A DNA stretch of 64,000 nucleotides from Octopus sinensis (lineage: Eukaryota), in contig NC_042998.1 in assembly GCF_006345805.1 (NCBI RefSeq), positions 174,530,001 through 174,594,000 on the forward strand, read 5' to 3'. Of the stretch, positions 4,503 to 50,457 are shown one piece after another (within the stretch, counting starts at the first letter, position 1; every line of letters begins with the position of its first letter). Below the pieces are notes generated by a model. The model was given only the letters and a program-made list of their open reading frames with translations, was not told the origin of the DNA and ran no database searches. Made by a program: the position numbers and the translations under genes.

Positions 4503-5026
4503 CAGGGTGTCCCCAAAAAATGTATACACACCTTAAATAATTGTAAATTTGGGGTTTATAATAATTCGAATAATTTTCAACATGTAAAAGAATTTACAAA
4601 TATCATTCTATTGTCTTGTTATCGCATGTTCTCAAACTGATGTCCGTTCTACTCCAGACACTGCTGACAACGCGAAGCGATGGAATGGCACACATCATGG
4701 AACAATTCCCTTGGGATATTCGTACATTCATGTTCAATGGTTGCCCTCAATTGAACGACTGTTGCAGGTTTCTGTGCGTAAACTTTGTCCTTTAGGTATC
4801 CCCATAAAAAGAAGTCTAGTGGTGTGATGTCTGGTGAACGTGGAGGGTATTCGACAAAACCTCTCCGTCCAATCCACCTGTTTGGCAAGATCCCATCAAG
4901 AAAGGATCTAACATCGCGATGGTAGTGCGGAGGTGCCCCATCTTGCTGGAAATAAAACTCTTCCTGTTCAAAGTCCTCTCGAATGCTTGGCATGACAGAC
5001 TGTGTATACATTTTTTTGGGGACACC

Positions 5027-7658: not shown

Positions 7659-7909
7659 AGGCGGCGAGCTGGCAGAAACGTTAGCATGTCGGGCGAAATG
7701 CGTAGCCGTATTTCGTCTGCTGTTACGTTGTGAGTTCAAATTCTGCCGAGGTCGACTTTGCCTTTCATCCTTTCGGGGTCGATAAATTAAGTACCAGTTA
7801 CGTACTGGGATTGATGTAATCGACTTAATCCGTTTGTCTGTCCTTGTTTGTCCCCTCTATGTTTAGCCCCTTGTGGGCAATAAAGAAATATATATATATA
7901 TATATATAC
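7659..7909 (+). mobile_element. tRNA-derived SINE, family A, full length
   Basis: A-box-like TGGCAGAAACG, B-box-like GAGTTCAAATTC, core GAGGTCGACTTTGCCTTTCATCC, tail ...CCCCTTGTGGGCAATAAAGAAATA(TA)n. 17-bp TSD ACCCATACTCCAACGAA at 7642-7658 and 7910-7926. Confidence 0.9.
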
Positions 7910-17610: not shown

Positions 17611-20014
17611 TGGGAATGATGGATTTTAAATTCCAGCCTTTTATGGTCTGAGTTCAAAACACGCCAATGCCAACTCTACTTTTTATTTTTCTAGACTCAA
17701 TAAGATAAAGTATCAAGCAAGTAAAAAGAAGTCTATAACCGTCACTCGCAAGTGAATATGGCTTGGTAACATGTTCCATGGTTGCTAATTCTTTTAGGTG
17801 CCCATAATGCCACAAGAGGGAGGAAAAGAAATTATTCAGAAATAGTTTAATATTCATACATATTATAAACTTAAACACTAACTTATCAGATGGTATCAAT
17901 GGATATTGATCAATTGGTATATACTGGTATTTAATAAAGGAGTACTTAGGTAAAAGAACATGCTAACTATATATTAATTTAATAATAATCTAAACAGTTT
18001 ATTTTAAGTAGTGAATACACCAGTATTGTTATATATAAGCTAAGTATGAATTTATAAAGGTACAAAAATTAGATTTATTTTATAAATAAATAAAGGCTAT
18101 TATAAAAATAATAAAGAAATAAAATAATCAGGTAGGGCAGAACACCATAGAAAAGGAATAAAATGGCTTAATCATTAAAAACAGGATAAAGTATATGTAG
18201 CTTATTAACCACATTTTAACTTTATACAATATGGCAATATTGTTTGAAATGATCTTTAGAAGTTATTTGATTTATCCCTTTCTTAAAATGCTCTGCCTTC
18301 CTGATCTTAGAATTTATAAGGGCCTTTATATAAGTAGCCCTTCTAATTAAGTACTCCTTGAAAACTATAAATATTGTGTATCGAGTAACAATAATAGATT
18401 CTAAAACCTATAATATAACCCTTAGTTTTAAGAAATTAGTGTAAAATTAGAATGTCCCATAACATAAATATTCCCTTAGCTAATACCATGCATCAGTCTT
18501 TATTAATACTAGCTAAATATGTAAATATATAATTTTTAGTTTAGTATATTTTGAATTATACATTTTCTGCAAATCTTCTCTATTGTGGTTAATAAGCTGA
18601 TTGAGTTAATAAGCTAATAAAGTGATTGAGATATAGAGATTTTGATTGAATAAATACTTACATAGCAATTTTAAAGTATGACTAGTGGAATGTACGACTT
18701 CAAAAGGAATTTAGTGAAATTAAAAGTTGAATGGTGAGAAGTTGCATACACTTAACTATTATTTTTACATGCAGAAGGCATTTCTAGATATTTTTTCCTT
18801 AATGATTTTGACACTAACCATTGGTTAACCATTCAAAGTCATCTAGAGTCTGGCTAGTAGTGATTAGATTGCTTCACTGAAGAGATTCTAACAAGACCGA
18901 AAGATGTCTGGAGTTATAATGCCAAGGATCACACTCGCTATATACTGTAGTCTTTAATTCAATTTTCAATTAGTTTAAATTCTGGAAATGGCTTCCTTAC
19001 CTTTCTTGACATTTAAACATTATACTAAGAGTAATTTTAATTAAAATGGGTTGGCCTTCAAAATTAAGTTTATAACTTCCACTTGAGGGCCTGCTTTGAA
19101 AGTAACGTTATTTGAGTTATTTCCCTTGGTTCAATGTTGTGCATTTGCTTAGCTTTGAAGCACGTAGAAGTATTTTAATATTTGAATGGTATAGATACAG
19201 AGCAAAATATTTTCCTTCAACTGTGATTTAGATATTTTTTAAAACTGTCTGTTTGGGGGAAACTGAAAAGCAGAATAATTTGCAATATCTTCCTACAAGT
19301 ACGATAAATTAATTTATATAAAAGTATTAATGGTCTCATTACTGAAAGTTTAAAAACGATGAAAGACAATGACATTTGATAGTAAATCTACTCGAACATT
19401 GCTTGCAGGAGCTAGAATAAAAATAACAAAAACAAATGACAACATTCGGCTACTGTCTGTCAGTGAGTGTAGAAAGTTTCGTGACAATTTATATCCGACT
19501 TAGATATTATAATATTGATGATTAGCCTACAACCATTTCAAATGATATTCTGAAGTTGAAGCACGCTACATTAGCCTTTGATGATAATTTTCCAAGTTGT
19601 TTACCTCATCTTTAGAGTGTATTTGACAAACAGATTTAACTCGTAAAGAAAAGGTTAAGAAGCTGGAAAAATATAATCTTATTAATGACTACGCATCCTT
19701 TAACTTTTAAATAATTCATTTATTCTATCATATTTTAAATTTCTACTGAAGACATCTTTACGGAAGTCACTAATGATATTTTAACTATTGTGATGAAGTT
19801 TTCCACAACTTTCTGTTAGCAATTAGCAATTTTAATACAAGCGAAACTTCCATGCAAAACTGCAGACTGTATGAATTTGTTTATCCCAAGTATATCCCAG
19901 TATTATACGATAAACCTCTTGAAATTAGTTTCGTATGAACAAATCACCTAAAAGATATTTGTTTTGGTTCAATTGACTGTTTCGGTTAAATGTGATAGCA
20001 TCCATCATTATATT

Positions 20015-20158
20015 ATAATAATGAAATAATGAAATTAGTGTATACAGTGCTCAGGTGCACCACAACTTGTCAGAAAGTGCATATAAAGTACATGCAGTAA
20101 TGTAGAAATGTCTGGAAAGCGAACAATGTATGAGTCAGATACATGCCCGTGCGTGCAT
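20015..20158 (-). mobile_element. CR1-clade LINE 3' UTR fragment
   Basis: Near-identical to 37680-37805 (TATACAGTGCTCAGGTGCACCACAACTTGTC...). Confidence 0.75.
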
Positions 20159-20199
20159 ATTATCATGCATTTGTAAATTAATGTACCTCATGCTTCACA

Positions 20200-22457
20200 T
20201 TAAAAAGAAAAACTATCCTGGGAAAAGCGGACAAAGTGAAAAGAGCCACCAATTTCTATAATGATGACATCCTGGTAGACGGGAGCATAGTGTCGGCATA
20301 AGTCACCCGAAGAGTTTCGGGCTAACTTCCAAACCACCGGAGGCGATGGAAGGAGAGCTGCATTGGGACTCAAGCTACGGAGAGACAAGACCGGCGCGTT
20401 GGTGTTTCGGAGAAGGAATGAGGTCCCAGAATTGGACACTAAGACGAGTAGGCGAGAACTGTTTTCTGTGTGTGTGAACCTGCTGGGACACTACCCGATT
20501 ACAGTGTGGCTCTGGACAGCATGCAGCTTCATCAAGAGGCTAGCTGAAGGAGTGACAAAGTGAGCAAGAAGACAGTTGCTATGGTGCAAGAAGTCTTGAA
20601 GAGAGTGACTGCGGAGGACCCAGTAAGAGGAAACTGATGTGTGCCCAAATTGAAGAATGGGATCGTGTGGTGTGGTGCTTGCAGCATAGCAACGAGGATT
20701 GTCCTGGAAATTGGAGATGTCGTAGTGGAAGATGCGGCCTAGCTCAGGAAGAAGGACGACTGCAACTACATCAACGTGGTGGAGCTGGATGCCGTGTTGA
20801 AGGAGTTCAACCTGGCCCTGAGGTGGGGGCTGCGTACCATCGAGATCCGGACCGATTCGGCCACTGTACATAGATGGGTGGGATCAATAGTCACCGGCGA
20901 GCGAAGGGTGCGAACCAAAGGGGGTGCAGAGATGCTGATAAGACGCCATTTGGGAATTCTGGGCGAGCTAGTTGCTGAGTTTGACCTGAAGCTGAGTGTG
21001 GTTTTTGTACCCTCAGAGAGGAATAGAGTGGACATCCTGACCAGAGAAAGAAAGCCTGGTTGCAGTTGCCAGAGGATCTGGAGCAAGGAGTGGATGCAGT
21101 GTGTCGACTGAGTGACTCGGAGCTGAGGAGACTGCATACCATGCATCACACGGGGGCTGAACCCTAACCCTTTTCTTAGCCCGGAAAGTTGACTCTGACT
21201 TAACCAGGCAGGGTGTGCAGAGAGTAGTTTGGAGCTGCGACAGGTGCCAGTCCACTGACCCCCGTTCCGAGTGTGCATGAGGTAGGAAGCATTCCAGTGG
21301 AACACAACTGGAAATGACTGGCAGTAGACATGACGCACTACCGGCAGGAGACATACCTCTCGATGGTCGCCTGCGGACCGGGGCGGTTGGCTATATGGAG
21401 GGCGATAAAGACGGGGACCGCGGAGGAAGTCACAAGAATGCTAAATGAGATATTCCTAGAACGAGGCCCGTGGATGAGCTGCTAGTGGACAATGGCACTA
21501 TGTTTCGTTCGGAGGTGCTGAGGGAAATGCTCGACAAGTGGTATGTTAACTGTTTCTTCAAGGCGGCATACCGGCCAAGTGGCAATGGGGTTGTGGAAAG
21601 GCATCGTTGCACCATCAAGACCATAGCAGAGAAGGGCCACATCTCACCGGTCGAGGTCGTTTTTTGTTTTATTTTTGTATAATATGTCGCCCATGTCGGG
21701 ACAGGCTGAGGAGTCAGTGTCACACAGGGCAATATTCATATACGAGTGGGAGACAACCATGTACTGCATCGCTGCAACCCGCAGAAGAGAGAGAGCATGC
21801 CTTTGTGCAGGCCAGGAAGAAGTCTGGGTTAAACCGCCAAATGCGCGGTGCACATCACAATAGGTAAAGGGGACAATAACCTCTGCAAATTCGAGGAACA
21901 ATGTTTTCCGTAGATAACATGCTACGTCATGTTTTGGATGTGTAGAGGATCATCAATGCGTCGGAGGATGGAGCCAATAGTAATGGACAAGAGGACGAAG
22001 CCGGCAGCAACATGCCAGGGACTGGGGCTAGTCTTCTAGTCCTGAAGTCCCACGGCGGTCGCAGAGGGAGCGGTGCCCTCCTCACTGGTTGACTGGTTAC
22101 AAGTTAAGGCGTGAAGTCAGGGTTGAGGAGAGGGTGTGGGCAGGTTTGTTGAATGATCTTCAGTCAGTGGGGCGTGTGATGTTATGAGCCAGGCTGTGTT
22201 GTAAGGAAGGGCCGGGAGTGAGGGAGTATGCATGTGCTGTCTGAAGTGGAGCCTGTGGGTCCCACTAGAAGGGCCGCGGTGAGTATGCGGGGTCGGCGAA
22301 GCGCGAGCGGGCAGTTGGCAGTGGACAGCGTATGAGAGCAGACCTGTTAGACGGTACGGCGGCAGACAGAGCACGTGGACGTTGTGAGTGACCCTTCCAG
22401 ATAGACAGGTAAGACTACCCCGTAATTCTCTCTCCATTTCCGTCTTTTCCTCCTTCA
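20200..22457 (+). mobile_element. Ty3/gypsy LTR retrotransposon, 5'-truncated pol (RT end, RNase H, integrase) plus 3' LTR; pseudogenised
   Basis: RT motif FYNDDILVD; RNase H INVVELDAVLKEFNLALRWG...IRTDSATVHRW...VPSERNRVDILTR; integrase LAVDMTHY, CGPGRLAIWR, ELLVDNGTMFRS, AYRPSGNGVVER. The RT-RH-IN order is gypsy-type. Confidence 0.88.
22112..22457 (+). repeat. 3' LTR of the gypsy element
   Basis: TGAAG...CTTCA inverted termini directly after the integrase tail and a short purine-rich run (AAGTTAAGGCG). Confidence 0.65.
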
Positions 22458-28058: not shown

Positions 28059-28416
28059 AAAAAGGAGATGTGGAACACGAGTTGTGATATATAAAAAAAG
28101 GAAATGAAGAAAATGCTGACAAAATAATTAAAGTAAGGGAGAGTGTATTAATTAGGTGAAAGTTCTTTTTACCGGTTGCGCATTTGTTATGCTTATCAAA
28201 AGATATTTTTTAAAGAGATATAGAGTTCCTTTCTGATAGATAAGAGAAAAAAATCTTTAAAAAATATCTTTAGATAAGCATAACAAATGCGCAACCGGTA
28301 AAAAGAACTTTCACCTAATTAAATACACTCTCCCTTACTTTAATTATTTTGTCAGCATTTTCTTCATTTCCTTTTTTTATATATCACAACTCATGTTCCA
28401 CATCTCCTTTTTTAAA
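28055..28416. mobile_element. Palindromic MITE-like element inserted in (TA)n
   Basis: ~165-bp near-perfect inverted arms TTTAAAAAAGGAGATGTGGAAC... / ...GTTCCACATCTCCTTTTTTAAA around a short spacer. Confidence 0.85.
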
Positions 28417-28896
28417 TATATATATATATATATAGTCTTGTGTGGGAGATAGAAAACTGGAGATCTTTTCCGTTTTCTTCCAACCACTTGGAGAAAATAA
28501 GAAATCAGAAATTACCAATTTTGTTCCAGCCACCCTTATATTATTTTGCTGGTGACGGAGACAGATGTTTAAAGAACATAGCTAAAAAAAACTTTTTTAA
28601 GGCTTTCGCATAAAATGTATGCCATGCGGCAATCATCGACGAGAAAATACTTTTTAGCCAGCAGTCGAGTGGTTAATAAACCCTTACTGGGTTAAGAAGT
28701 TACACTAGCTTTATTAAACGCGTAACAGCTCCAAATATGTTTTACATCTGCACTTAGAATATTAGATGCTAAGAACTCATGAAATCAAAGCTAAAAATGA
28801 ATAAAGATTAAGCTTGATAAACATAACTATGACCAAAGTTGTTTCAACAAACTCCGTCTTTTTTTTATTTATTTCAGACAGTATTCTTTCATTCTA

Positions 28897-29225
28897 TTAC
28901 TTGTTCCTGTCATTTTGACTGCGGCCATGAATAAATCGGCCCCAGGAATGATCCTTTGTAAGCCTAGCACTTATTCTGTCGGTACGCTTTTGCCGAACCG
29001 CTAAGTTACGAGGATGTAAACACACCAACATAGGTGGAGACACACACACACATATATATATACGACGGGCTTCTTTCAGTTTCCGTCTACCAAATCCACT
29101 CACAAGGCTTTGGTCGGTCCGAGGCTATAGTAAAAGACATTTGCCCAAAGTGCGACGTAGTGGGACTGAATACGGAACCATGTGGTTGGTAAGCAAGCTT
29201 CTTACCACACAGTCACGCCTGCGCC
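28897..29225 (-). mobile_element. SINE family B
   Basis: Same head and tail as 27627-28018. Confidence 0.8.
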
Positions 29226-29243
29226 TTATTAAAGTATACTAAA

Positions 29244-29958
29244 GGTAAATTTCTGTATTAACACCAGCGCAATTTTCACCAAGAAAAAAAAACTCGGATT
29301 TTTTTTCATGGAATCAAGTACCCTGACCTCCTAATATGCTGCAAATCCCTGTTTTTGGTTCGGAAAAAAATAATTGGAATTTTTTTTCGCTTAATGAATT
29401 CCTGTGACCTAATTATGCTACAAAACCCTTTTTGGGGTCCGAAAAACGGAGTGGGGTTAGGTGAAAGCCTCGGAAATTTCACCCCCGACCATCATCGATG
29501 TTTTCATCCGCACGATTTTCGCTAAGGAAAAAGAAATCGGATTTTTTTTTTTTTGCGTGAAATCAAGTACCCTGATTTCCTAATATGCTGCAAATCCCTT
29601 ATTTAGGTTCGGAAAAAAAGGGGGCGTTCCCCCCCCCCCCACACACACTTTTTCGTGCGGGTGAAAAGATCAATGGGTGTGAGGTGAAATTTCCGAGGCC
29701 TCCACCTCACCTCACCCCATTTTTCGAACCCCAAAAATGGATTTTGTAGCATATTAGGTCACAGGAATTCATTCAAAGAAAAAAATTTTCCAATGATTCC
29801 GGGATGCCCCACCCCACTCGCCCTTCTTTTTTTTCCGAACCAAAATAAGGTGTTTGCAGCATATTAGGAGGTCAGGGCACTTGATTACACGCAAAAAATC
29901 CGAGTTTTTTTTTTTTTTCTTAGTGTAAATTGTGCGAATATTAATACAGAAATTTACC
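29244..29958. mobile_element. Second long-TIR non-autonomous DNA element (GG-terminal)
   Basis: GGTAAATTTCTGTATTAA / TTAATACAGAAATTTACC termini, ~250-bp imperfect arms, internal repeat AATCAAGTACCCTGA..CCTAATATGCTGCAAATCCC; no TSD found. Confidence 0.75.
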
Positions 29959-31346
29959 TTTTCTTATTGCTTCAATAGCAAAGAAGATAGCGCCATGTCA
30001 GCCCTGAACGAGCAAAGCTATAAAAGACCATCCTATTTTTCTTTTAGAGTATCTCGGAATATGTTAACCTCTGTGTCGTTCCATTTCTAAAACCGTAGGA
30101 CAATGATTCTCAATTCGTGGAGTGCTTCACATGGAAAGTTTTTAAATAATTGTTATCAAATAAAATAAAAGGAAAGTTAAATGCTTAAGAAAAATCTCTT
30201 TCTTACTTTTCAAAACGCTCAAATACAGTAATAGTTGATTATTTTCTGCTGTTTTAAAGCCTTTTTTTCGAGAAGCGGGTGGCAAGACACGATTCATCAT
30301 CAGGCAAATTGCATTACTGAAAATAGCCTCAAGGTAATTTTTCGTCAGGTCTGCAACTCAGAAATTTCTGGGAGTCGCAGTTTGGCTATGACTGAAAAAT
30401 GTTTTACGTTTTTTTGGGTTTTTTTTTATCTGCGGCACACCGTTTGAAAACCATTGCAAAGGAAGTATGATTTGAGACATTTGGCTTCTATTTCTAGCAT
30501 AACGAGTACTCACATAAGGTTCTATTTTAATAAAGAAGTGTTTTTGGGTGCGAGAAAATTGTGAAGGTAACTTTTTAATTAACTCTTCTGGATAGTAAAC
30601 ATTAGTTAATCAGTTAGCTGTGCATGACAAGTTAAAGCCTTCCAGCTGCACCTAATATGCAGGTAATTAAACGGAATTATTTTTCTATTTCTAGTATTTT
30701 TCCTCGTTTAGCGTTTAGATGCGAACAATTACCGTGTAAAACGTATTTCGAGGTTAAAAAAAAAAACAATGGTCACTTAATAATTATTAATTTAGTAACG
30801 GGAAACAATTTCTTAAAGAATGAAGCAAATAAAAAGAGAAAACTATCAATCTTTTTAATAATCTCATTCATTTAGGAAAAGATTATTAGAAAAGTTTCCC
30901 CGCGAGATGTCATAGGTTAGAGGACACACTTTATAACTTCTCCCTGGAAGAGTTCAAATTTCAAGTGGAGATTATGAAAGGTGGCTTAACTGAATATTGA
31001 GTGGAGGGTTTTGGAATACAGATTCGAACTATGTGGGAAGAAAATGTCAAATATTTACAATCTGTTGAATAAAAACCATTCCATATTGAAGATCGGTCAT
31101 AAAACGAGACAACTAAATAAACCCACCGAATTGTGTATATAAGGAAAAAAATTTTTAACAAATCTGCGAAAAATAATTTGAAATAATGGAAAAAAAGATA
31201 CCATTTTACTGATGTATAAACCTTTACTTTCTTTCTAAACAAGTTTGATGATTATGTTGGTGATAGGAATGGTTGACAGACAAAAATAGTTAAAACAAAC
31301 TAAAAACCAAAGTCGACAAATATGTTCCATCAAGTGCAAGTAATCT

Positions 31347-32309
31347 TCACAGTGGACAATATTCTCGAATAATGTTACCTCCAGAATTTGAAACAGGTCT
31401 TAAATAACCGCTGTTGCCAGAAAGCCATTCTATATATTCTGCTTGTGTTGATGAATCAAATGGTGAGGAGAGAGTTTCTGTCAGTATTTGGTCAGTGGTG
31501 TCGTTGGCTCCATTGAAAATTCCGCTCCAACAGAACAGGTACATGGAGAGTAATTGAATATCCTGCTCATTATCAAACTCGTTCTTAATGTAAGAGGAGA
31601 GGATATCTCTCAGTTGTAGTTTTTTCATTAAACGCTGTCTACTTGACTCCATTTCTGATTGCTCGAACTTGCCATGCTTTGAGTCTAATTTCGAAACAGC
31701 TTCATTGTTAATCTTTGACCGTCTATTTCGAGTTTCTCGTTGCTTTTCACAATGTCCCACATTAGTTAGTTTTCCTTCTTCCAGACTGTTATTGTTTTTA
31801 TTCAGTGCCGCATGGAAATCGGGGGGTAATTCCTCGGAATAATCAAATTCATCAGGGTCCCTCTTTAGTTTCAGAGATCTTCGGCTAACACGTTGACCGA
31901 AGCCGCATTTATAAAAAGGTATGGTTTTCCGCCTGGTCTTTATATTGGCTAATAAATCCTGCCGGCCTCTGCGAAAGTAAGGGTGACTGAATGAAAAAAC
32001 ACCTCTAGAAGACACATGCCAGCCAAAACTATATTCGCGGAAAAGACGCCTCAGGTTAGTAAACTGTGGAATTTGAACAAAGCCTGGATACAAGTCCATT
32101 ACTAAAGCTTCATAATTTTTAGGTCCAGGATTTTCTTCAATTAAGGAATTTGAAGCATTTTGTTGTGTAGGAAAGCCTAGTGATATTCTTACGCCATTAC
32201 TGTCCCACCGAAGAATACGGCCGTCCTCAACTACTGCATAAAGCTTCTCTGGAAATTTGTCACCACGCTGGAGATAAAGGCGGGCCTTTTGCTTTCTTTC
32301 TGGATTCAT
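31347..32309 (-). CDS. Intronless HSF-type DNA-binding-domain protein (divergent; HSFY/HSFX/HSF5-like architecture), 320 aa from the first ATG
   Basis: Longest clean ORF in the window. FPEKLYAVVEDGRILRWDSNG (helix 1/W..G), FTNLRRLFREYSF (recognition helix) and FSHPYFRRGRQDLLANIKTRRK (F.HP.F.RG..LL..I.R) match the HSF fold. The track start at 32336 is a TTG; the ATG is at 32309. Confidence 0.88.
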   Translation of the reverse strand: MNPERKQKARLYLQRGDKFPEKLYAVVEDGRILRWDSNGVRISLGFPTQQNASNSLIEENPGPKNYEALVMDLYPGFVQIPQFTNLRRLFREYSFGWHVSSRGVFSFSHPYFRRGRQDLLANIKTRRKTIPFYKCGFGQRVSRRSLKLKRDPDEFDYSEELPPDFHAALNKNNNSLEEGKLTNVGHCEKQRETRNRRSKINNEAVSKLDSKHGKFEQSEMESSRQRLMKKLQLRDILSSYIKNEFDNEQDIQLLSMYLFCWSGIFNGANDTTDQILTETLSSPFDSSTQAEYIEWLSGNSGYLRPVSNSGGNIIREYCPL

Positions 32310-32397
32310 TTTGACTTGTTGTAATTTAGTTGGCAAACATATATATTGTTTTGTGATTCTTTTTCCGTATACTACATAGCAACATAGTGCAGCGAAA

Positions 32398-32456
32398 CAC
32401 GAGTCTCGCTGAACGCATGTCCGTTAGTTCTTTGCTCGTGGGGTTTTCACGAGTAA
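32398..32456. promoter_or_regulatory. CpG-containing putative promoter/5' leader of the HSF-like gene with a 10-bp stem-loop
   Basis: TTTGCTCGTG-GGGTTTT-CACGAGTAAA at 32431-32457 plus a further CACGAG at 32398, ~90-150 bp upstream of the ATG. Confidence 0.3.
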
Positions 32457-32624
32457 ACCGGATGTTAGCCATGTGACTGCGTTTCAGAAGTAGAACTCAA
32501 CACTTTTTAATATATGTATCGTCAAACACAAGACAAATCTATGAATAAATCTATGGATGTACAAGGCCATTTTTCATCAGTATTTTGTCTCACTGTAATT
32601 AATCTCTTAATAGAACGAAATACC

Positions 32625-32815
32625 TCTATTTCTTTATTACCCACAAGGAGCTAAACACAGAGAGGACAAACAAGGACATACATTGGTATTAAGTCGATTA
32701 CATCGACCTCAGTGCGTAACTGGTACTTAATTTATCGACCCCGAAAGGATGAAAGGCAAAGTCGACCTCGGCGGAATTTGAACTCACAACGTAACGCAGA
32801 CGAAATACCGCTAAG
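32625..32815 (-). mobile_element. SINE family A (5' part replaced)
   Basis: Tail and core match 7659-7909 in reverse. Confidence 0.8.
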
Positions 32816-33223
32816 CTAAAAACGAACACCACATGTTTGAAGTCCTCAAGTGTCGGATAGCAAAGACGTTGCAGGTAAAGAATACGGTGTTTATGGTTAG
32901 GCCGAAAAAGGGGTTTTATGCGTATTCTTTTCCTCCGCCGCAAAGAGAATGTGATCAAGGCTTGAACAGTGAACAGTGGAAGTTAAATTAAACTTTCATG
33001 CTAGACATTCTTATATCTATATTTACGGATATATTCATCGGCTATTTCCTAGCTTCTTAAATCTGGTCGTAAGAACTTTTTTTAAATGGGCCATCTAACG
33101 AAAAATCGATCTCTCAAATGTTTGAACAAAATGGAAATGGAATGTTGTAGTGTCCATGCCTGTACTAATGACCTCAGTATGTTGAAACAACAAAAGGTAA
33201 AAACTGACTATCCTCTTTTTTGG

Positions 33224-33430
33224 CAGAAACGTTAGCACGCCGGGCGAAATGCGTAGCCGCATTTCGTCTGCCGTTACGTTGTGAGTTCACATTCCGCCGA
33301 GGTCGACTTTGCTTTCATCCTTTCGGGGTCGATAAATTAAGTACCAGTTACGCATAGGGGTCTATGTAATTGACTTAATCCCTTTGTCTGTCCCCTCTAT
33401 GTTTAGCCCCTTGTGGGCAATAAAGAAATA
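33224..33430 (+). mobile_element. SINE family A
   Basis: TGGCAGAAACGTTAGCACGCCGGGCG...CCCCTTGTGGGCAATAAAGAAATA. Confidence 0.85.
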
Positions 33431-34162
33431 TATCCTCTTTTATTCTATGAGGTTCGATAATTAAAAATATGGAGAGAATCTGAAAATTTTTATGTAAGGT
33501 TAAATCACTTTAATTCCACTAAGCTTTTGGTAGTAAATGTACACTAGAATTTTCGTTGCCAACAGCATTTTCAAGATCGCTTGTAAATGAAAAAAAATAT
33601 TGTCTTGCTTGTCACATTGAACTCCATGTGAATCATCACAGCATGTCAGAGTGTGTAGCGCGGTCATTGATTAGGAAGAGACATTGTATAAACAATATCG
33701 TTTATGCGTCCACTTGTCTCCGTTTTCTTGCGATAGAACGTTCGGCGCTTTTAGCATATCGAAAATTTATATCAAGGCAAATCAGTATATCAAGCTACCT
33801 GCCGAAAATCTGGACCGTTCGCCTAACGTGACTGATGTTGCATTTATCTATAGCAAAATCAGTCAACTCTTACAGTCCTAAAGTCCTAATTAAACAGACC
33901 CATGATCAAAGGCATTCAAACTGTAACTATCTTCTTACTCCTAGATATATTGTGCCCAGAAACACCTAATATAAGATGTCCTTTTTACGTAGGACACTAG
34001 AGAGAAATTTGGCTCCTTTTTGTTGTTGTTGTTGTTGTTGTTTTGTAGATCGGACGAACTTGTAGATGCTACCATTGATTTATCTCTGATGCAAATATTT
34101 AGATACATTCCCTCAATACTACTACTAAGTGCAAAAGAACAGCTACCGTCGTGCTCGGCTGA

Positions 34163-34307
34163 GTCCACCACCAGAAATTACATTCCTTTAGAAATCAACT
34201 GGACAGTGGAGAGAGAGGATATCTCCGGACTGTCACACTGCACTCCATGTGAATCATCACATTATGTCGGAGTGTGCAGTGCGGTCCTTGGTTAGGAAGA
34301 GACATTG
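34163..34307 (+). ncRNA. Candidate structured RNA with hairpin-H-hairpin-ACA layout (H/ACA-like)
   Basis: Weak 5' hairpin, AGAGGA (ANANNA) at 34214-34219, strong 3' hairpin (GGAC..CACTGCAC..ATGTGA-ATCA-TCACAT..GTGCAGTG..GTCC), ACA at 34302-34304. The 3' part is duplicated at 33610-33690. Confidence 0.25.
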
Positions 34308-36461
34308 TATATCAGGAACAACAAATGTGAACTGTAAAAACCATAGGATATATAAAATATCTAATTTGACATAATATTCACACCTTTACATCTTTTATTG
34401 CTGTGTAATGCTAAGTAATTCATTCCAACAGTAACTTGAAAATTTGCCATTCCCCTAAATGTCTGGCTATGTGCCTATGTTAGAAACTATTTAATAGGAC
34501 ATAAAAACAGAATCTTCTTTATTGTAATAAATTCAAATTAATTATACTTACATTTTACGATTTAAACTATACTTTGAGAGATACTAGCTTTGATACCAAC
34601 TATTGATGTTTATGTAATTGGAAGCTGATAGGTGATTTAACATTAGAACATTAATCTGAGGACTTTGGTTAAGCTGCATCTAATAATTTTTTCATGATCA
34701 CTAATTGCTACAGTTAACTCTATTTTAGGTGGTGGTAGAAAGGGTCATGTTAATAGCAATCATGATAATGGTAGCAGTGTTTGGAATCGTAGTGGTGATG
34801 ATAGTTGGCAAGATCAGAATGATAATATCAGTAATTAGAATGCCAGTGAGTTGCTGTGATCAGTACATTACAGCATGTCACAGTTCTAGTCAGTAGTTGC
34901 AACAGTGAGGTGATTTGGTTGGCTTTGAACAAAACTGTAGCAGTAGGTGTGGCACAGATTAGATCAGACAGGCAACTTTTTATGCAAAGTGGGCTCCATG
35001 AGATATGTCTTACCTGCAGGTGAGTTACACTACTAAAAATTCAAGGTAATTTTTTTATTAGGGATGCTATTCAGAAAGTCCCACAGATTGTCTGTGACTG
35101 TGTTAGCTATTGCCAACCAGTTTTGATACAGAAAATATCTTGTATAGTATTTTGTTTTTGGCAATGTCAGTGTACCTTACAGCTGGAGTAACTAAGATCA
35201 CTTTTGGTTCAGCTGGACTTTCAGAGCACGTGGTCAATTCTGATACAAGTTTCTCACAAAGATTTGCTGAAACAACAGTCTACTGGATAGGGTGTTGGGG
35301 TACCAGTGTGAAATTCAATGCAGGATTTTTGTTACTGCTATGAAGCCCTAATGATCTCTGATCAAACAAAAGTATGATCAAAAGCATTCCAGCCATGACT
35401 ATCTCATCTTGTTTCTATTATTCTGCATCCAGGTCTATATTCCATTTTTTAAAAGAAAAGTCTATAATTATCTTCTGCTGTGTCTGGGGAGAGTCATTTT
35501 CTTTTTGTGCTTTATAATGTAACACACTCACCAATAAAATTTCCACTTTTTTCTTATTATAAGGCACAAAAAGAAAATGACTCTCCCAAGACCCAACAGA
35601 ATATGCTTCAACACACGAACTCATATAAAGAATCTTGCAAACCAAATCCAAAAACGAAAAATCTATATTATCTGTTGTGCTCCTTTTTACCATTTCAGTA
35701 AGGTGACTTAATAATTTGGCTGATATTTGTAGAATGTTGATGTGCCTTGTAAATGCAGCTTGGCTACCATGAATAAGTAATGCACAGGTGTCTATTTAAA
35801 AGAATATATTTTTTGTTAAAACTTGTGCTTAATCCAGAAGCCAATTCAGTCCACTGTCTGTTTATAAAAAAAAAAAAATATCACCTTTTACCTTCCATTT
35901 GGCTTGTTACTATCATCGTTTTAACATCCACTTTTCCATACTTGCTTGCATCAGATGAAGTTTGCGACAGATCTTTTATAGTTGATTGCATTTCCTGTCA
36001 CCAACCACCATTTGTTTCCAAACAAGGTAATATTTCCCTATGGTCACATGTTTCCACAGAATATTGGAAATAAATGATACTGCTTGTGTGACAGTAACAC
36101 AAGGAGAAACAAGCATACATATACACACACCCAATGGGATTCTTTCAGTTTCCATCTACCAAATCCACTCACACGGTCAGTCCAGGGATATAGAAGACAA
36201 TTCCCTAGGTGCCATGCAGTGGTACTGAACCCAAGACTATGTGGTTGGGAAGCAAACTTCTTAATCACATAGCCATCCTTACATCTACAGATACAAATTC
36301 ATTTTAATTAACCTATTAATGATCTTAAAAAATAAAAATAACAAAACATTGTTATTCTTTTAGTGTGTGGAGTGGATGTAAAACTTCCAGTCAGAAAAAT
36401 CTGCAACCAGTTTCAAATCTTTATAGGATCCCAAAAACAGGTCTCAGAAAAAAAAAGATTT

Positions 36462-37662: not shown

Positions 37663-38270
37663 AATAATAATAATAATAATGAAATTATTGTATACAGTGC
37701 TCAGGTGCACCACAACTTGTCAAAAGTGCGTATAAGCATATGCAGTAATGTACAAATGTCTGGAAAGTGAACAGTGTATGAGTCAGATACATGCTTGCGT
37801 GTGTATGGAGGGGAGAAAATCAGGTGTAGTGTTGGCAAATCTCAGGAAGCATGGAAGTTTTGAAGGATGCAGTGCTCCGACAACTAACAACTGATGCCGG
37901 TAGTTTGTTCCATGCTTCAGCAAATCTTAGCATGAAAAAATGTTTCCGAAAGTCATGGGAGCTGTGTTGTTTTCTGACTTTGTAAACATGTCCACGGGTG
38001 TTAGACAGGTGGAATTTGAAAAGGTGCTCAGAGTTATTGTTTGTAAGATGGTTAATAATTTTATGGATGTCTGCCAAGTCAGCTGCCAGACGTCGGAGTT
38101 TCAATGTGTCCATGCCCAGGGAAGTAAGGCGTTCAGAATATGGCAAATACCTGATGGAAGGTATTCTCGTGGTTGCACATCGCTGAACGGCTTCCAGACG
38201 ATTAATATCCTGGGCAAGATAGGGGTTCCAGACCGGTGATGCAAATTCCAGGTGAGGTCGCACCATTTAT
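37663..38270 (-). mobile_element. CR1-clade LINE 3' fragment with (ATT)n tail
   Basis: ORF 37820-38266: VRPHLEFASPVWNPY...LEAVQR.AT...YSERL..L...LRRL..DL...TRGH...WNKLP. Confidence 0.92.
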
Positions 38271-44130: not shown

Positions 44131-44418
44131 TCACAGAGAGAAAGCACAATTGAACTGCTGATAAGCAGCAAAATAAGATTACACTTTAAAACTTGTGTGT
44201 TGATATGCAAATTTTATTTCCTAGTCAAAATATTTAAATGAGAAAGAAGCTGCATTATTTTCCTTTTTTATATCTAGAGTGCTTATTACTTTTAATAATT
44301 TCTTTTCTGGAGATTCAGTGTGTGTACTGCACCTAAAAATAGTAAATTTTTACTTTCCATCCATTTTAAATTACTGAACATTCGGGACGTAAGAGAACAA
44401 AACTAAAATTAATTCTCA

Positions 44419-44521
44419 ATGAATGACCTTCAAGATTTTTACAAAGATTTCTCTTGTGAATACTCTTTTATCTTACCACCAATGTATAACTCGCCAAGTT
44501 TAGATATACCTTCCATATCAG
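44419..44521 (+). CDS. MARF1: Candidate first coding exon of the MARF1-like gene (GC donor)
   Basis: ATG preceded by an in-frame TAA; 34 open codons plus 1 nt; donor CAG|GCAAGT. Its phase 1 matches the phase-1 start of the 45127 exon (G|AC = Asp). Confidence 0.5.
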
Positions 44522-45126
44522 GCAAGTATTTTTACAATACATTATTGCTAAGGAAATAAATTTGTTTTAAAATAATAACCTGCATTGTTTTTATGTTCTA
44601 TGTTGAAGATAATTTTAATTATATCTTTAATATAAGTCTTTTGAATTTTGTTTTTTCAAAATACTTTTAACCAAGGTTGTTTTTTTTTTATCAGGAATGA
44701 AATTTTTTTTAAATTTTGTTACATACCGAAGTTGGCTATTTTTCTTTTCTTTTTACCATTACTAAAATTAAAGTAAATATCTGTGTATTGTTTTAAATAT
44801 ATTTCACGTTATGAGGTTTTGTTTAATGTTCTTCATATATTAACTTAAAATAAAGTAGATCATTCTTCAATTAATTTCTGAAAATAGAATTCAATTCCGA
44901 ATTAATTGAAATCAATTATTTACTAGAAATTTTGCTTATTTTATCCTAATTTTCATATCAATAAAGTTACAAGATTACATCTAGTCAATTTCAATGGTTA
45001 TCTTTTTAAATTATACCTCAATCTAAATTTATTCAAAGTGAATAACTTATTTTGATACCGTTTCATTTATAGCATCAAATTTTCATAAAGAATTTTATCT
45101 TCATTTTTTTTTTTTTTTTTTTACAG

Positions 45127-45665
45127 ACTCTAACATATCAGGATCGAATTCAAATAGTAATTTTGATGATGGAACATTTTACCATAACCCAGATAGCAGT
45201 TTGCCAGAGTCCTCACACAAAAATCACATCAATGCTGTTAAAGAAAGAGTCAAGTCTTCCTATAGAACCAATATAGACAAAGATAATTTTTCCAATATTT
45301 TAAAACAAAATAGCATTCAAAAAGAGCTAATTGAAGAAGTCAGTCCTAGTTTACAACCTGGATTACTAGAAATTCCAAAATCCAATACATTTGATCCTTC
45401 AAACAATTTTAAGAATCAATCTGAAAAATATTCTGCCACCCATAGCTTGTATGCCCATCAAAACCCACTTAAAAATTCATTTCATCCTGTGACAGCAAAA
45501 ACAACAAATTCCCAAATAACAAACACCAATCCAGTCTTAATGTCAGACTCTGAAAAATGTACTGCATTAGATTCTGTGGAAGTACTGGTTAGTAATCTTG
45601 ACTATAACATTAGTCCAAGAGAGTGGAAAGAAATTCTCTCTTCAACTTTTCGAGCTGCAGTTATG
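45127..45665 (+). CDS. MARF1: MARF1/limkain-b1-like exon: low-complexity linker and start of RRM
   Basis: Strong acceptor (T)n-ACAG|, open frame ending VEVLVSNLDYNISPREWKEILSSTFRAAVM|GTAAGA; compare vertebrate LQVSNLDYRMSRKELQQ. Confidence 0.85.
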
Positions 45666-46207
45666 GTAAGATTTCCATAAATTATTATTCTTAGTTCTTT
45701 ATAGCAACATAGATGCTTAGTGGATGGATGGTTATGTTCATATGTATATGTATCGTTCAACCACGGTAGTGATTGAATTTATTTTTTAAGTTCACCATTT
45801 CGTCAATCGCAGCAGCTACCAAGCTTCACCACTAATTCAGTTCTCAACTAAATTGCAAACTTAGTTTTAAAGAGGACACTTCCTCAACTACACTTTGGCA
45901 TAGTTTGAGGTTTGGTTCTGTAGAAAAAAAGTTACATTAAAATATCTGCGACCTCAAGGGGCGGGGCGCAGTAAGAAAGATATTCATCTTCAATTAACAT
46001 AAATTTTTTAATTTTAAATTAAAAGTATACTTTGCTTAAATGATAGGAAAATGCATGAAAAATTCAGAATCGTTAGTCACATTGAACAAAAATTAGTAGA
46101 AAAACAGTTATGATGTAAAATGTTATGAAACTTAATGTCAGTAAGGGAGTAATGCTTAAGCAATAACAATAAAGAATATATTTCTAAAATGAATATTTAC
46201 ATTCTAA

Positions 46208-49000: not shown

Positions 49001-50281
49001 ATCCATTTTTTTCTGATTTCATGAAACTGCTGTAATGGCTACATAATGCAAATAATAGAAAAATCTTAAGGTAACATATTTTTAAAATACTGCTTTTCAT
49101 TTTCTTGTCAGTATTCAGTACATTATTTCTGTCAAGTCATTCTCATAGCATTTTTGCCATTGGGGCACTTCAATTTTGTTTTTAACAATTCTATTCCTTT
49201 GTCTTTGACTTTCAGTTGAGATGAGTGGAAAGTAATGCAATTGTTATAAAATTTTCTACAAGAATTGTAAAAGTGACATATCTTAAAAAATGTTCAGTAT
49301 AGAATTAAATATTGATGTAACTTTCATTCACTTGCTTCATGAGTTTGATAATCCATCTCTTCCCCAAGGTGTGGTGCCATAATCAAGCTCATCTGCTTTT
49401 GATAAGTTTGGTTTTTTAATCCTCCTGAATGGTCAAACTCTTTGTGAAAATTCTTTTGGGAACTGTTTATTCACCATTCACTTAACTATTAACAGTTAGT
49501 ACTGCTGTTGGTAGCAAGTTTCCATCAACCTGTAATAGAATTGGTCCTGACCTGACAACTATTTCTGTATTATTGCTGTATAAAATTGCTACTTAATTCA
49601 CTTAAGTAGGCTCAGTAATCAAAAATCTAATTGGTAGAATATTTGTTTTAGCATGGTTTGACCAAATAATTGCCAAGTCCTGTTTCTTAACCAGTTGCAA
49701 AAAGAAAAGAAAATCCATACCATGTTCCCTTTTCTATGCTGGCATAGGTTGCACGGGAGTTTTTGAGGCAGTTTTTTTTTTTTTAAGCTAGATGCCCATC
49801 CTGATGTCTACTCTTGGTAGTCTAACACTGGGATTCAGTTTGCTTATTAGGTTTCTCGTTGATAAATATTACATTAGATATACTGACTGTAACTTTATGA
49901 AGCAGAAGAAAAATAATGTAACTATCATGTAGTCATCTACAGTTCCTTCACTTCAGTTCTGTCTAAAGCTCTCTTGAAATAATTGTATGGTGTATACAAT
50001 TTGGTGAGCAAAAAGCTTAGGCTCCAAATCATAGCTTCCAGTAAAATCAATGTTAATTTTATTTTCTGCAAGTTTTTATTTTTTTATTACCACCATGGTA
50101 TTTTCAGAAGGTTATTCAGCCACGAAAAACAAATTATTGAAAGGCCACATTGTAACAAAATTTTGACATAATACTGAAGTGACCAACAACCAGTGTGTTG
50201 TCAAAATGACCCACCTAAAGTATAACATTATCTAATCTTTTATCTCTGCTTTAGTTTCATTGTATAGTTTTTTTTTATCAG

Positions 50282-50457
50282 GTTATTGATGTAACAGTCA
50301 AAGCACAATCTGACAATTCAAACTTGGCCATTGTGCGGGTACCAACAACTGATGATGCCAGATTTGCAATATCTCAATTTCATGGAAAGAAAATTGGTTA
50401 TAAAAGAGTACATGTGTGTTTAAAGTCTGAAGGAAATCTAAATCAGTCTAGCATAAG
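50282..50457 (+). CDS. MARF1: MARF1-like exon: remainder of RRM
   Basis: TCAG| phase 0; VIDVTVKAQSDNSNLAIVRVPTTDDARFAISQFHGKKIGYKRVHVCLK; AG|GTACGT phase 2. Confidence 0.92.

What the first reader, a model, noticed from the sequence alone, without database searches (positions are those of the whole stretch)
31347..32309. Intronless, highly divergent HSF-family factor with a rewired recognition helix
Seen: the HSF scaffold is present, but the canonical SFVRQLNxYGF helix reads NLRRLFREYSF (central Arg kept; Ser to Asn, Gln to Leu, Asn to Arg). There is a ~20-aa insertion (FPTQQNASNSLIEENPGPKN) before helix 2, the wing loop is very short, and no long HR-A/B trimerisation heptad is evident. Known: these helix residues read the nGAAn heat-shock element, and HSFs lacking HR-A/B (HSF5, HSFY, HSFX) are germline factors in vertebrates. 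Inference: a lineage-specific, possibly retroposed HSF paralogue with altered DNA specificity. A 320-codon intact frame amid decayed repeats suggests selection.
Basis: partly seen in the sequence, partly recalled or inferred. Interest (0 to 1): 0.72.

Follow-up and report, generated by a model that had tools for sequence, protein, structure and literature searches.

The report
Conserved atypical HSF-like factor in octopus
This is a real, intact octopus gene for a heat-shock-factor-type DNA-binding protein with an altered DNA-reading helix, but it is not an octopus novelty: the same single-exon gene with the same helix is found in other cephalopods, snails and a pearl oyster, and the family appears never to have been studied.

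Summary
Window 31347-32309 (minus strand) is an intact 320-codon ORF. Residues 19-125 match Pfam HSF_DNA-bind above the curated cut-off, and the predicted fold superposes on solved HSF1/2/4/5 DNA-binding domains. The recognition helix reads NLRRLFREYSF, the wing is short, a 17-aa loop insertion is present, and there is no HR-A/B heptad region.

- **Selection:** purifying selection is strong. dN/dS is 0.10 against Argonauta and 0.014 in the DBD core.
- **Not lineage-specific:** the same helix is invariant in orthologues from Argonauta, another cephalopod, Littorina, Nucella and Pinctada. A sister clade (NFRRQLREYGF) includes an annelid.
- **No recent retroposition:** the CDS is single-exon in every orthologue whose locus I read. 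The head-to-head MARF1-like neighbour is shared with Argonauta. Only the loop insertion is cephalopod-specific, and it evolves faster.

Best reading: an orthologue of an uncharacterised, mollusc-wide, intronless family of HSF-type DNA-binding factors. It keeps the guanine-reading Arg but changes the neighbouring residues, and it lacks the trimerisation domain. It is therefore probably a constitutive transcription factor that is not heat-switched and has a modified half-site. DNA specificity, oligomeric state and tissue of expression are untested.

The parts
31347..32309 (-). Complete single-exon coding sequence, 320 codons plus stop, of the atypical HSF-type factor
   Evidence: ORF list. It differs at one residue (L181V) from the annotated O. 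vulgaris protein P0001. The Argonauta orthologue is 75% identical, with nucleotide similarity ending 4-6 nt outside the CDS. dN/dS is 0.10.
31935..32255 (-). HSF-type winged-helix DNA-binding domain (residues 19-125)
   Evidence: Pfam PF00447 scores 29.1 bits against a cut-off of 22. AlphaFold core pLDDT is about 87-97. Foldseek top 42 PDB hits are HSF1/2/4/5 and Skn7 DBDs, TM 0.66-0.81 normalised to target except the HSF1 NMR model 2ldu at 0.63. dN/dS is 0.014 with the insertion excluded.
32121..32171 (-). Cephalopod-specific 17-aa loop insertion between strand 2 and helix 2 (residues 47-63, PTQQNASNSLIEENPGP)
   Evidence: Present in the three cephalopod sequences and absent in gastropod and other members. 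pLDDT is about 52. dN/dS is 0.43 over residues 43-64.
32025..32057 (-). Recognition helix NLRRLFREYSF (residues 85-95); R88 corresponds to HSF1 Arg71
   Evidence: Read directly from the sequence. HMM alignment to HSF1/HSF4. These residues are invariant across 30 family members.
31998..32012 (-). Very short wing loop (residues 100-104, SSRGV) between strands 3 and 4
   Evidence: Secondary structure of the model. HSF1/HSF4 carry 7-8 extra residues here relative to the family profile.
31542..31661 (-). Predicted long helix (residues 217-256) carrying the family's second conserved motif, h..hh..[FY]hKNE[FL]..[DE][DE] (KNEF at 242-245)
   Evidence: Model helices 217-244 and 247-256, pLDDT about 69-76. 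The motif was found in 45 of 115 family representatives, nearly all of them in the RRL clade. This segment is acidic, pI 5.1.
31353..31424 (-). C-terminal beta-strand module (residues 296-319, ...GYLRPVSNSGGNIIREYCPL), conserved among cephalopods
   Evidence: Model strands 296-298, 301-307 and 313-319, with block pLDDT rising from 67 (residues 291-300) to 80-84 (301-320). It aligns with P0002 and P0003. dN/dS is 0.14.

Best explanation
The ORF is the octopus orthologue of an ancient family of atypical HSF-type DNA-binding proteins with a single-exon coding sequence. The family is conserved in cephalopods, gastropods and bivalves, and a sister clade reaches annelids.

Shown:
- The N-terminal 130 residues form an HSF-type winged helix-turn-helix domain.
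- The recognition helix keeps the arginine (R88) that in HSF1/HSF2 makes the bidentate contact to the G of nGAAn.
- The helix also carries family-invariant changes at the neighbouring positions: Ser->Asn85, Val->Arg87, Gln->Leu89, Asn->Arg91.
- The wing is minimal.
- The helix 2-helix 3 loop is 3 residues longer than in HSF1/HSF4.
- There is no HR-A/B or HR-C.
- The gene is under strong purifying selection.

Inferred:
- It acts as a sequence-specific nuclear transcription factor.
- It reads a G-containing half-site related to, but not identical with, nGAAn.
- It is not regulated by the heat-driven monomer-to-trimer switch of HSF1.
- Its acidic C-terminal half, with the conserved amphipathic KNEF helix, serves as the partner-binding, activation or self-association module.
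- A germline or developmental role is a guess. It rests on the conserved head-to-head MARF1-like neighbour and on the precedent of testis-biased 'HSFY' genes in bivalves.
For: Identity and fold:
- Pfam HSF_DNA-bind above cut-off.
- The family profile hits HSF4, HSF1 and HSF2 DBDs at 2e-9 to 9e-8.
- AlphaFold model plus Foldseek give TM 0.72-0.81 to HSF DBDs.

Conservation:
- Named orthologues exist in O. vulgaris, Argonauta hians, Littorina saxatilis, Nucella lapillus and Pinctada imbricata.
- Helix residues are invariant.
- 76 representative clusters score E<=1e-30.
- 115 of the 168 best hits carry the N-x-[RK]-R helix, split into RRL and RRQ clades. The RRQ clade includes Ridgeia piscesae.

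Selection:
- dN/dS is 0.10 overall and 0.014 in the DBD core.
- The CDS differs at 4 of 963 nt from the O. vulgaris reference, against about 4% in the flanks.

Gene structure and synteny:
- Single-exon CDS in Argonauta, Littorina, Pinctada and an annelid-type member.
- The MARF1-like neighbour is shared with Argonauta and O. vulgaris.

Expression of an orthologue:
- Eight sequencing runs give the same 3.1-kb contig, ending about 20 nt after an AATAAA.

Role of the HSF residues: PMC8379338.

No HR-A/B.
Against: No DNA-binding, oligomerisation or expression data exist for this protein or for any family member I could identify.

Four residue changes in the recognition helix could abolish DNA binding rather than retune it.

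The Pfam score is modest, 29 bits.

Model confidence outside the DBD is low to moderate: mean pLDDT 64.8, and residues 143-208 are below 50.

No octopus transcript was found in the collections. Only genome-derived records hold the protein.

The distance to the MARF1-like gene is uncertain, between 2.5 and 12 kb. The near end rests on a doubtful 2-codon first exon in the O. vulgaris gene model.
Confidence: 0.7

Rival explanations
1. One reading: a cephalopod- or octopus-specific retrogene copy of an HSF gene that acquired a new recognition helix in this lineage.
For: The CDS has no intron. It lies among repeats. Two A13-14 runs sit on the coding strand 1.4-1.8 kb downstream of the stop. The 17-aa loop insertion is indeed cephalopod-specific.
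Against: The same helix and the same single-exon structure occur in gastropod and bivalve orthologues. The locus is syntenic between octopus and Argonauta. No intron-bearing parent with this helix was seen. The A-runs cannot be tied to the gene and are not conserved.
Confidence: 0.04
2. It is the spiralian orthologue of one of the vertebrate atypical germline HSFs (HSFY, HSFX or HSF5). It would then work as they do, as a meiotic or spermatogenic transcription factor binding short HSE-like sites.
For: It shares the N-terminal FPxKL[WY] motif. Vertebrate HSF5, HSFX and HSFY are testis factors (PMC12366260). A gene annotated HSFY is a testis-module hub in the clam Mulinia (PMC9716669). The neighbour is a MARF1-like germline-type gene.
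Against: The family profile scores HSF4 (39.9 bits) and HSF1 (37.5) above HSFY from memory (28.5) and HSF5 (21.2; 21.9 for the PDB chain). HSFY and HSF5 keep the canonical [FI]RQLNLYGF helix. High-confidence HSFX/HSFY orthologues are reported only in mammals. I could not show that the bivalve 'HSFY' or the oyster gonad HSF belongs to this family.
Confidence: 0.15
3. The HSF-like fold has been repurposed and no longer reads DNA sequence. It might act as a protein- or RNA-binding adaptor, or as a non-specific chromatin binder.
For: Four of the positions around the key Arg are changed, including the loss of Asn74 and Gln72 equivalents. No oligomerisation domain is present to give avidity. The Pfam score is modest.
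Against: The guanine-contacting Arg and the C-terminal basic T-R-R-K stretch are retained and invariant or nearly so. The helix gained two Arg and the DBD has pI 10. The helix is under extreme constraint. Relatives with two tandem DBDs exist, which suits binding to paired DNA sites.
Confidence: 0.1
4. A chance open frame or decaying pseudogene without function.
For: No octopus transcript was found in the collections.
Against: About 1.4e-5 such ORFs are expected by chance. dN/dS is 0.10 with dS about 1.2. Conservation holds across mollusc classes. A cephalopod orthologue is recovered as a polyadenylation-signal-terminated 3.1-kb contig in eight runs.
Confidence: 0.01

Closest known systems
Canonical heat shock factors (HSF1/HSF2/HSF4; Pfam PF00447 DNA-binding domain)
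   Same: Same winged helix-turn-helix fold (TM 0.72-0.81). Same invariant Arg in the recognition helix. Same Y-x-F end of the helix, the F-x-HP-x-F-x-RG...LL...I-K motif after the wing, and the basic stretch at the C-terminal end of the DBD.
   Different: The helix reads N-L-R-R-L-F-R-E-Y-S-F instead of S-F-V-R-Q-L-N-x-Y-G-F. There are 3 extra residues (PGF) between helix 2 and helix 3. The wing is 7-10 residues shorter. There is no HR-A/B or HR-C. The C-terminal KNEF helix is not found in HSF1-4. The CDS is single-exon.
Vertebrate atypical germline HSFs (HSF5, HSFY, HSFX)
   Same: These are also divergent HSF-type DBD proteins that do not drive the heat-shock response (PMC12366260). They share an FPxKLW-type start of helix 1. 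HSFY appears to share the longer helix 2-helix 3 loop, based on a sequence from memory, so this is a lead only.
   Different: They keep the canonical RQLNLYGF helix. HSF5 and HSFY have long loop or wing insertions, where this family has a minimal wing. Profile scores are lower than to HSF1/HSF4. Orthology is not shown.
Skn7-type fungal response regulators with an HSF-like DBD
   Same: Another case of the HSF DBD fold used outside the heat-shock trimer context. It is also recovered by fold and profile search (5d5x/5d5w).
   Different: Skn7 has a coiled coil and a receiver domain, and it is fungal. Nothing of the kind is present here.

Membership tests
HSF-type DNA-binding domain superfamily (Pfam PF00447) | Profile match above the curated gathering score over the whole domain | tested here: met
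   29.1 bits against a cut-off of 22; residues 19-125 cover profile positions 1-99 of 100.
HSF-type DNA-binding domain superfamily (Pfam PF00447) | Winged helix-turn-helix fold superposable on solved HSF DBDs | tested here: met
   Model core pLDDT is about 87-97. Foldseek gives E 3e-6 to 2e-4 and TM 0.66-0.81 to HSF1/2/4/5 DBDs, with the HSF1 NMR model 2ldu at 0.63.
HSF-type DNA-binding domain superfamily (Pfam PF00447) | Invariant arginine in the recognition helix (HSF1 Arg71 / HSF2 Arg63) | tested here: met
   R88 aligns to it. It is invariant in alignments A2 and A3. Its role is described in PMC8379338.
Canonical heat shock factor (HSF1-4 type) | Recognition helix S-F-V-R-Q-L-N-x-Y-G-F, including the Asn that reads the base preceding GAA | tested here: not met
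   The helix is NLRRLFREYSF. The Asn74 equivalent is Arg91 and the Gln72 equivalent is Leu89.
Canonical heat shock factor (HSF1-4 type) | HR-A/B heptad-repeat trimerisation domain after the DBD | tested here: not met
   No Pfam hit beyond the DBD. Residues 131-216 have no predicted secondary structure and residues 143-208 have pLDDT below 50. The best heptad occupancy is 0.33 there and 0.45-0.5 in helix 217-256; this is a crude test.
Canonical heat shock factor (HSF1-4 type) | Heat-inducible trimerisation and binding to inverted nGAAn arrays | not testable with these tools
   Needs EMSA or DAP-seq and SEC-MALS or cross-linking, with and without heat.
Atypical germline HSFs (HSF5 / HSFY / HSFX) | DBD closer to HSF5, HSFY or HSFX than to HSF1-4 | tested here: inconclusive
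   HSF5 scores 21.9 bits against 40.7 for HSF4, so it is not closer. HSFX was not tested.
Atypical germline HSFs (HSF5 / HSFY / HSFX) | Germ-cell-restricted expression | not testable with these tools
   No octopus expression data were reachable. The O. sinensis gonad paper and its supplements do not list the gene.
Processed retrogene (recent, lineage-specific) | Intronless copy whose orthologues or parent in related lineages contain introns | tested here: not met
   The CDS is single-exon in Argonauta (960 nt), Littorina (1500 nt) and Pinctada (906 nt), and in an annelid-type member (1404 nt).
Processed retrogene (recent, lineage-specific) | New genomic location, poly(A) remnant and target-site duplication | tested here: not met
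   The head-to-head MARF1-like neighbour is shared with Argonauta. Only two non-diagnostic A13-14 runs lie 1.4-1.8 kb downstream. I did not search specifically for target-site duplications.

The most novel reading that the evidence does not exclude
Molluscs, and probably Spiralia more widely, carry a second, undescribed and intronless family of HSF-fold transcription factors, in two clades. One has the helix N-x-R-R-L-F-R-E-Y plus a KNEF helix and often a C-terminal PCGxCxCC motif. The other has N-F-R-R-Q-L-R-E-Y. The family would read a DNA element different from the heat-shock element, work without the HR-A/B trimer, and control a germline or meiotic programme next to MARF1. That would contradict the textbook view that invertebrates have a single HSF.
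Probability: 0.3. Interest if true: 0.6.

Novelty: new variant of a known kind. Interest (0 to 1): 0.4.

Why it matters
The HSF field treats most invertebrates as having one HSF, and treats the atypical HSFs as vertebrate or mammalian inventions (review PMC12366260).

Here is a strongly constrained second HSF-type family. It is conserved across mollusc classes, has an annelid sister clade, has a systematically changed DNA-reading helix and has no trimerisation domain.

If its binding site and targets were determined, two things would follow. It would show how the HSF fold can be retuned, since the Arg is kept and every neighbour changed. It would also add a candidate regulator to mollusc developmental or germline networks.

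For the octopus genome itself the gene is an ordinary orthologue that is already annotated, not a cephalopod innovation. Only the 17-aa loop insertion is cephalopod-specific.

Tried and rejected
1. **Oyster gonad HSF link.** I tested whether the oyster gonad-differentiation HSF (LOC105331364, PMC12111275) belongs to this family. Its four primers match none of the fetched loci. Their translations match none of the 196 fetched proteins. One primer has no match in the metagenome contigs. This was a dead end because no C. gigas orthologue was in hand.

2. **Mulinia 'HSFY'.** No sequence or identifier is available in the supplement, so its family membership is unknown.

3. **Third homology search.** It added no new taxon names.

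4. **Cluster look-ups.** Twenty representatives yielded one organism name, Ridgeia piscesae. The taxonomic range outside molluscs and annelids therefore stays open.

5. **Octopus expression.** The exact window protein is not on record, and P0001 is held only by the genome assembly. The O. sinensis gonad paper has no entry.

6. **Literature.** Searches for the motif strings and for LOTGIDRAFT_159233 found nothing relevant.

7. **RNA genes.** Rfam and tRNA scans of the window were empty.

8. **Transposon-borne gene.** Rejected. The CDS region of the O. vulgaris locus matches the window only at this site. Only the CDS is conserved with Argonauta, and synteny is kept.
Full report
**1. What is there**

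The feature lies on the minus strand. An ATG at 32309 opens a 320-codon frame that ends with the stop codon at 31347-31349. The frame stays open for only 9 codons upstream, to a TTG at 32336. It is by far the longest ORF in the 64-kb window; the next is 190 aa, in a GC-rich patch. At 36% GC the chance that 320 codons stay open is about 1e-10. That gives about 1.4e-5 such frames expected per window.

The protein differs at one residue (L181V) from an annotated Octopus vulgaris protein that UniProt calls 'HSF-type DNA-binding domain-containing protein'. The window is about 96% identical to the O. vulgaris reference chromosome OX597815.1 across 6-7 kb around the gene. The CDS differs at only 4 of 963 positions, 3 of them synonymous. 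The window therefore comes from a close relative or a divergent haplotype of O. vulgaris. At this short distance the CDS is already about ten times better conserved than its flanks.

**2. The observation checks out**

- **Domain match.** Pfam HSF_DNA-bind matches residues 19-125 end to end (profile positions 1-99 of 100), at 29.1 bits against a curated cut-off of 22.
- **Fold.** An AlphaFold model built on a 30-sequence family alignment gives a confident DBD core: block pLDDT 87-97, with helices 19-29, 63-73 and 84-92 and strands 33-35, 41-44, 96-99 and 105-109. The 42 best Foldseek matches in the PDB are all HSF1, HSF2, HSF4, HSF5 or Skn7 DNA-binding domains. E-values run from 3e-6 to 2e-4, and target-normalised TM-scores are mostly 0.66-0.81.
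- **Recognition helix.** A profile of the family aligns to HSF4, HSF1 and HSF2 at 2e-9 to 9e-8. Arg88 corresponds to HSF1 Arg71, Asn85 to Ser68, Arg87 to Val70, Leu89 to Gln72 and Arg91 to Asn74.
- **Loops.** The same alignment shows three extra residues (PGF) between helix 2 and helix 3. It also shows a wing 7-8 residues shorter than in HSF1/HSF4. Octopus is two residues shorter again than its gastropod orthologues, leaving a 5-residue loop, SSRGV.
- **Insertion.** The insertion before helix 2 is real. By alignment it is 17 residues (47-63), it is modelled with low confidence, and it occurs only in the three cephalopod sequences.
- **No trimerisation domain.** Nothing resembling HR-A/B is present. 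There is no Pfam match beyond the DBD. Residues 143-208 are predicted disordered. The only long helix is 217-256. Its best heptad a/d hydrophobic occupancy is 0.45-0.5 in a crude scan.

**3. It is not lineage-specific**

A word-indexed search found seven relatives:
- the O. vulgaris record;
- an Argonauta hians orthologue (75% identity, full length);
- a 326-aa protein from eight sequencing runs (40% identity over 99% of the query, and carrying the same loop insertion, so presumably another cephalopod);
- proteins from the gastropods Littorina saxatilis and Nucella lapillus;
- two unnamed proteins from assembled sequencing runs.

A profile search added the bivalve Pinctada imbricata and some 20 unnamed clusters. 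NCBI named the octopod proteins after Lottia gigantea LOTGIDRAFT_159233, which implies a Lottia homologue as well.

In the 30-sequence alignment the invariant positions include P75, G76, F77, N85, R87, R88, L89, R91, Y93 and F95. The 'rewired' helix is therefore a family character, not an octopus change.

An exhaustive HMM search of 1.84 billion representative proteins gave 885 hits at E<=1e-3, 124 at E<=1e-10 and 76 at E<=1e-30. Of the 168 best hits, 115 carry an N-[FLIV]-[RK]-R-[LQM] helix. Canonical SFVRQLN helices appear only below about E=1e-20. Two clades are visible:
- **RRL clade.** This clade contains the octopus gene. Most members share a second motif, h..hh..[FY]hKNE[FL]..[DE][DE], which in octopus is residues 232-250 inside the predicted helix. 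Twenty-nine family representatives also end in PCGxCxCC, which cephalopods lack.
- **RRQ clade.** This clade has the helix NFRRQLREYGF and lacks the KNEF motif. It includes a protein of the annelid Ridgeia piscesae.

**4. It is not a recent retrocopy**

The coding sequence is a single exon in:
- O. vulgaris;
- Argonauta, 960 nt for 319 aa;
- Littorina, 1500 nt for 499 aa;
- Pinctada, 906 nt for 301 aa;
- an annelid-type member, 1404 nt for 467 aa.

The gene sits head to head with a MARF1-like gene (LOTUS/OST-HTH domains) in both Argonauta and O. vulgaris. Exons of that gene can be placed in the window at 44394-44522, 45589-45672 and 50271-50439 on the plus strand, and two of them encode the two halves of an RRM.

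Nucleotide similarity between octopus and Argonauta stops 4-6 nt outside the CDS. Two A13-14 runs lie 1.4-1.8 kb downstream on the coding strand, but they are not diagnostic. If the family arose by retroposition, that happened before cephalopods, gastropods and bivalves diverged.

**5. It is under selection**

A Nei-Gojobori comparison with Argonauta over 317 codons gives dN 0.126, dS 1.20 and dN/dS 0.10. dS is close to saturation, so the ratio is if anything overestimated.

| Region | dN/dS |
|---|---|
| DBD without the insertion | 0.014 (4 non-synonymous against 38 synonymous differences) |
| Insertion region, residues 43-64 | 0.43 |
| Disordered linker | 0.13 |
| C-terminal 30 residues | 0.14 |

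The contigs that carry the third cephalopod orthologue are 3094-3097 nt in the six runs listed, from eight runs that hold it. They have 388 nt upstream and 1.7 kb downstream of the CDS, and they end about 20 nt after an AATAAA. That is what assembled mRNA looks like, so that orthologue is very probably expressed. No transcript-derived record of the octopus protein itself was found.

**6. How it probably works**

In HSF1 and HSF2 almost all base-specific contact comes from the bidentate hydrogen bonds of Arg71/Arg63 to the guanine of GAA. Asn74/Asn66 makes a water-mediated contact to the preceding base. A C-terminal Arg adds auxiliary contacts. The wing does not touch DNA (PMC8379338).

This family differs as follows:
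- The Arg is kept and invariant.
- The basic stretch at the end of the DBD (T-R-R-K) is kept.
- The Asn is replaced by an invariant Arg.
- A second Arg is added next to the key Arg.
- In the RRL clade, Gln72 becomes Leu.
- The DBD is strongly basic, pI 10.

I therefore infer a DNA-binding transcription factor that still reads a G-containing half-site but with a different flanking preference.

Without HR-A/B and HR-C it cannot use the heat-driven monomer-to-trimer switch. The acidic C-terminal half (pI 4-5), with the conserved amphipathic KNEF helix, is the obvious candidate for partner binding, activation or self-association. Relatives with two complete DBDs in tandem exist in the same family (P0004, P0008-P0011, P0032, P0033). 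This suggests the DBDs work in pairs on DNA.

A germline role is only a guess. It rests on three points:
- the conserved MARF1-like neighbour;
- the fact that vertebrate HSF5, HSFX and HSFY are testis factors (PMC12366260);
- a clam gene annotated HSFY that is a hub of a testis/meiosis module (PMC9716669).

I could not show that the clam gene, or the oyster gonad HSF of PMC12111275, belongs to this family.

**7. Comparison with known families**

The protein is a member of the HSF-type DBD superfamily. The profile, fold and key-Arg tests are all met.

It is not a canonical heat shock factor. The helix signature and HR-A/B were tested and are not met.

It cannot be assigned to HSF5, HSFY or HSFX. 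The N-terminal FPxKL[WY] motif and the helix 2-helix 3 loop length do look HSFY-like in the hhalign alignment, but this is a lead only.

A recent review states that most invertebrates have a single HSF, and that high-confidence HSFX/HSFY orthologues are known only in mammals. Full-text searches for the helix strings and for the Lottia locus tag found no paper on this family.

**8. Verdict**

As an octopus feature, however, it is an ordinary and already annotated orthologue.

What remains of interest is the family: an apparently unstudied, intronless clade of HSF-fold proteins in molluscs and annelids, with a retuned recognition helix and no trimerisation domain. I rate interest at 0.4 and novelty as a new variant of a known kind.

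Noticed in passing
window 44394-44522, 45589-45672, 50271-50439 (+); annotated start near 34840: A MARF1-like gene (LOTUS/OST-HTH in the O. vulgaris and Argonauta models) lies head to head with the HSF-like gene. Two of the matched exons encode the halves of an RRM (VLVSNLDY... / ...LAIVRVPTTDDARFAISQFHGKKIGYKRVHV). The O. vulgaris model starts with a doubtful 2-codon exon (ATGCTA|GTGAGT) only about 2.5 kb from the HSF-like ATG. The first exon shared with Argonauta is 12 kb away.
   Followed up: partly
P0004, P0008-P0011, P0032, P0033 (unnamed, from sequencing-run assemblies): Relatives of the same family carry two complete HSF-type DBDs in tandem, both with the helix NL[RK]RLLREY[SG]F, on one 320-380-aa protein. 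Pfam finds two stretches at 79 bits.
   Followed up: no
29 of 115 family representatives, e.g. P0016, P0031, P0036, P0043: A C-terminal PCGxCxCC cysteine motif, possibly metal-binding, is common in the family but absent from the cephalopod, Littorina and Nucella members. Cephalopods instead end in a conserved GYLRPV...G.I.R.Y.PL beta module.
   Followed up: partly
P0111 (1091 aa, unnamed): One protein among the weaker hits carries six tandem canonical HSF DBDs, five with the helix FLSFVRQLNFYGF and the sixth a divergent IIDFVRQLDAFGF.
   Followed up: no
L003-L008 (3094-3097 nt contigs listed, from eight runs ERR123703xx/ERR124087xx): Near-identical contig ends across the runs and an AATAAA about 20 nt before the 3' end indicate assembled mRNA of the third cephalopod orthologue, with 388 nt of 5' UTR and 1.7 kb of 3' UTR.
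   Followed up: partly
window 32627-32813, 33251-33430, 7670-7893: Copies of a short interspersed repeat of about 190-220 bp, 86-93% identical to copies in the O. vulgaris locus. Two of them sit in the region between the HSF-like gene and the MARF1-like gene model.
   Followed up: no
window 4649-5011 (-) and 37820-38266 (-): ORF remnants that read like a mariner/Tc1-type transposase C-terminus (...PDITPLDFFLWGYLKDKVY...) and a LINE reverse-transcriptase tail (MVRPHLEFASPVWNPY...). Neither reached Pfam at E<=0.01, so this rests on reading the sequence only.
   Followed up: partly
window 20001-22000: A GC-rich island (GC 0.50 against about 0.36 elsewhere, GC skew +0.21) with overlapping minus-strand ORFs of 126 and 190 aa. 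Not examined.
   Followed up: no
window 28413-35266 vs L010 (O. vulgaris OX597815.1): Flanking DNA is only about 96-97% identical to the O. vulgaris reference, with many indels, while the CDS is 99.6% identical. The window is therefore probably from a sister taxon of the O. vulgaris complex or a divergent haplotype.
   Followed up: partly
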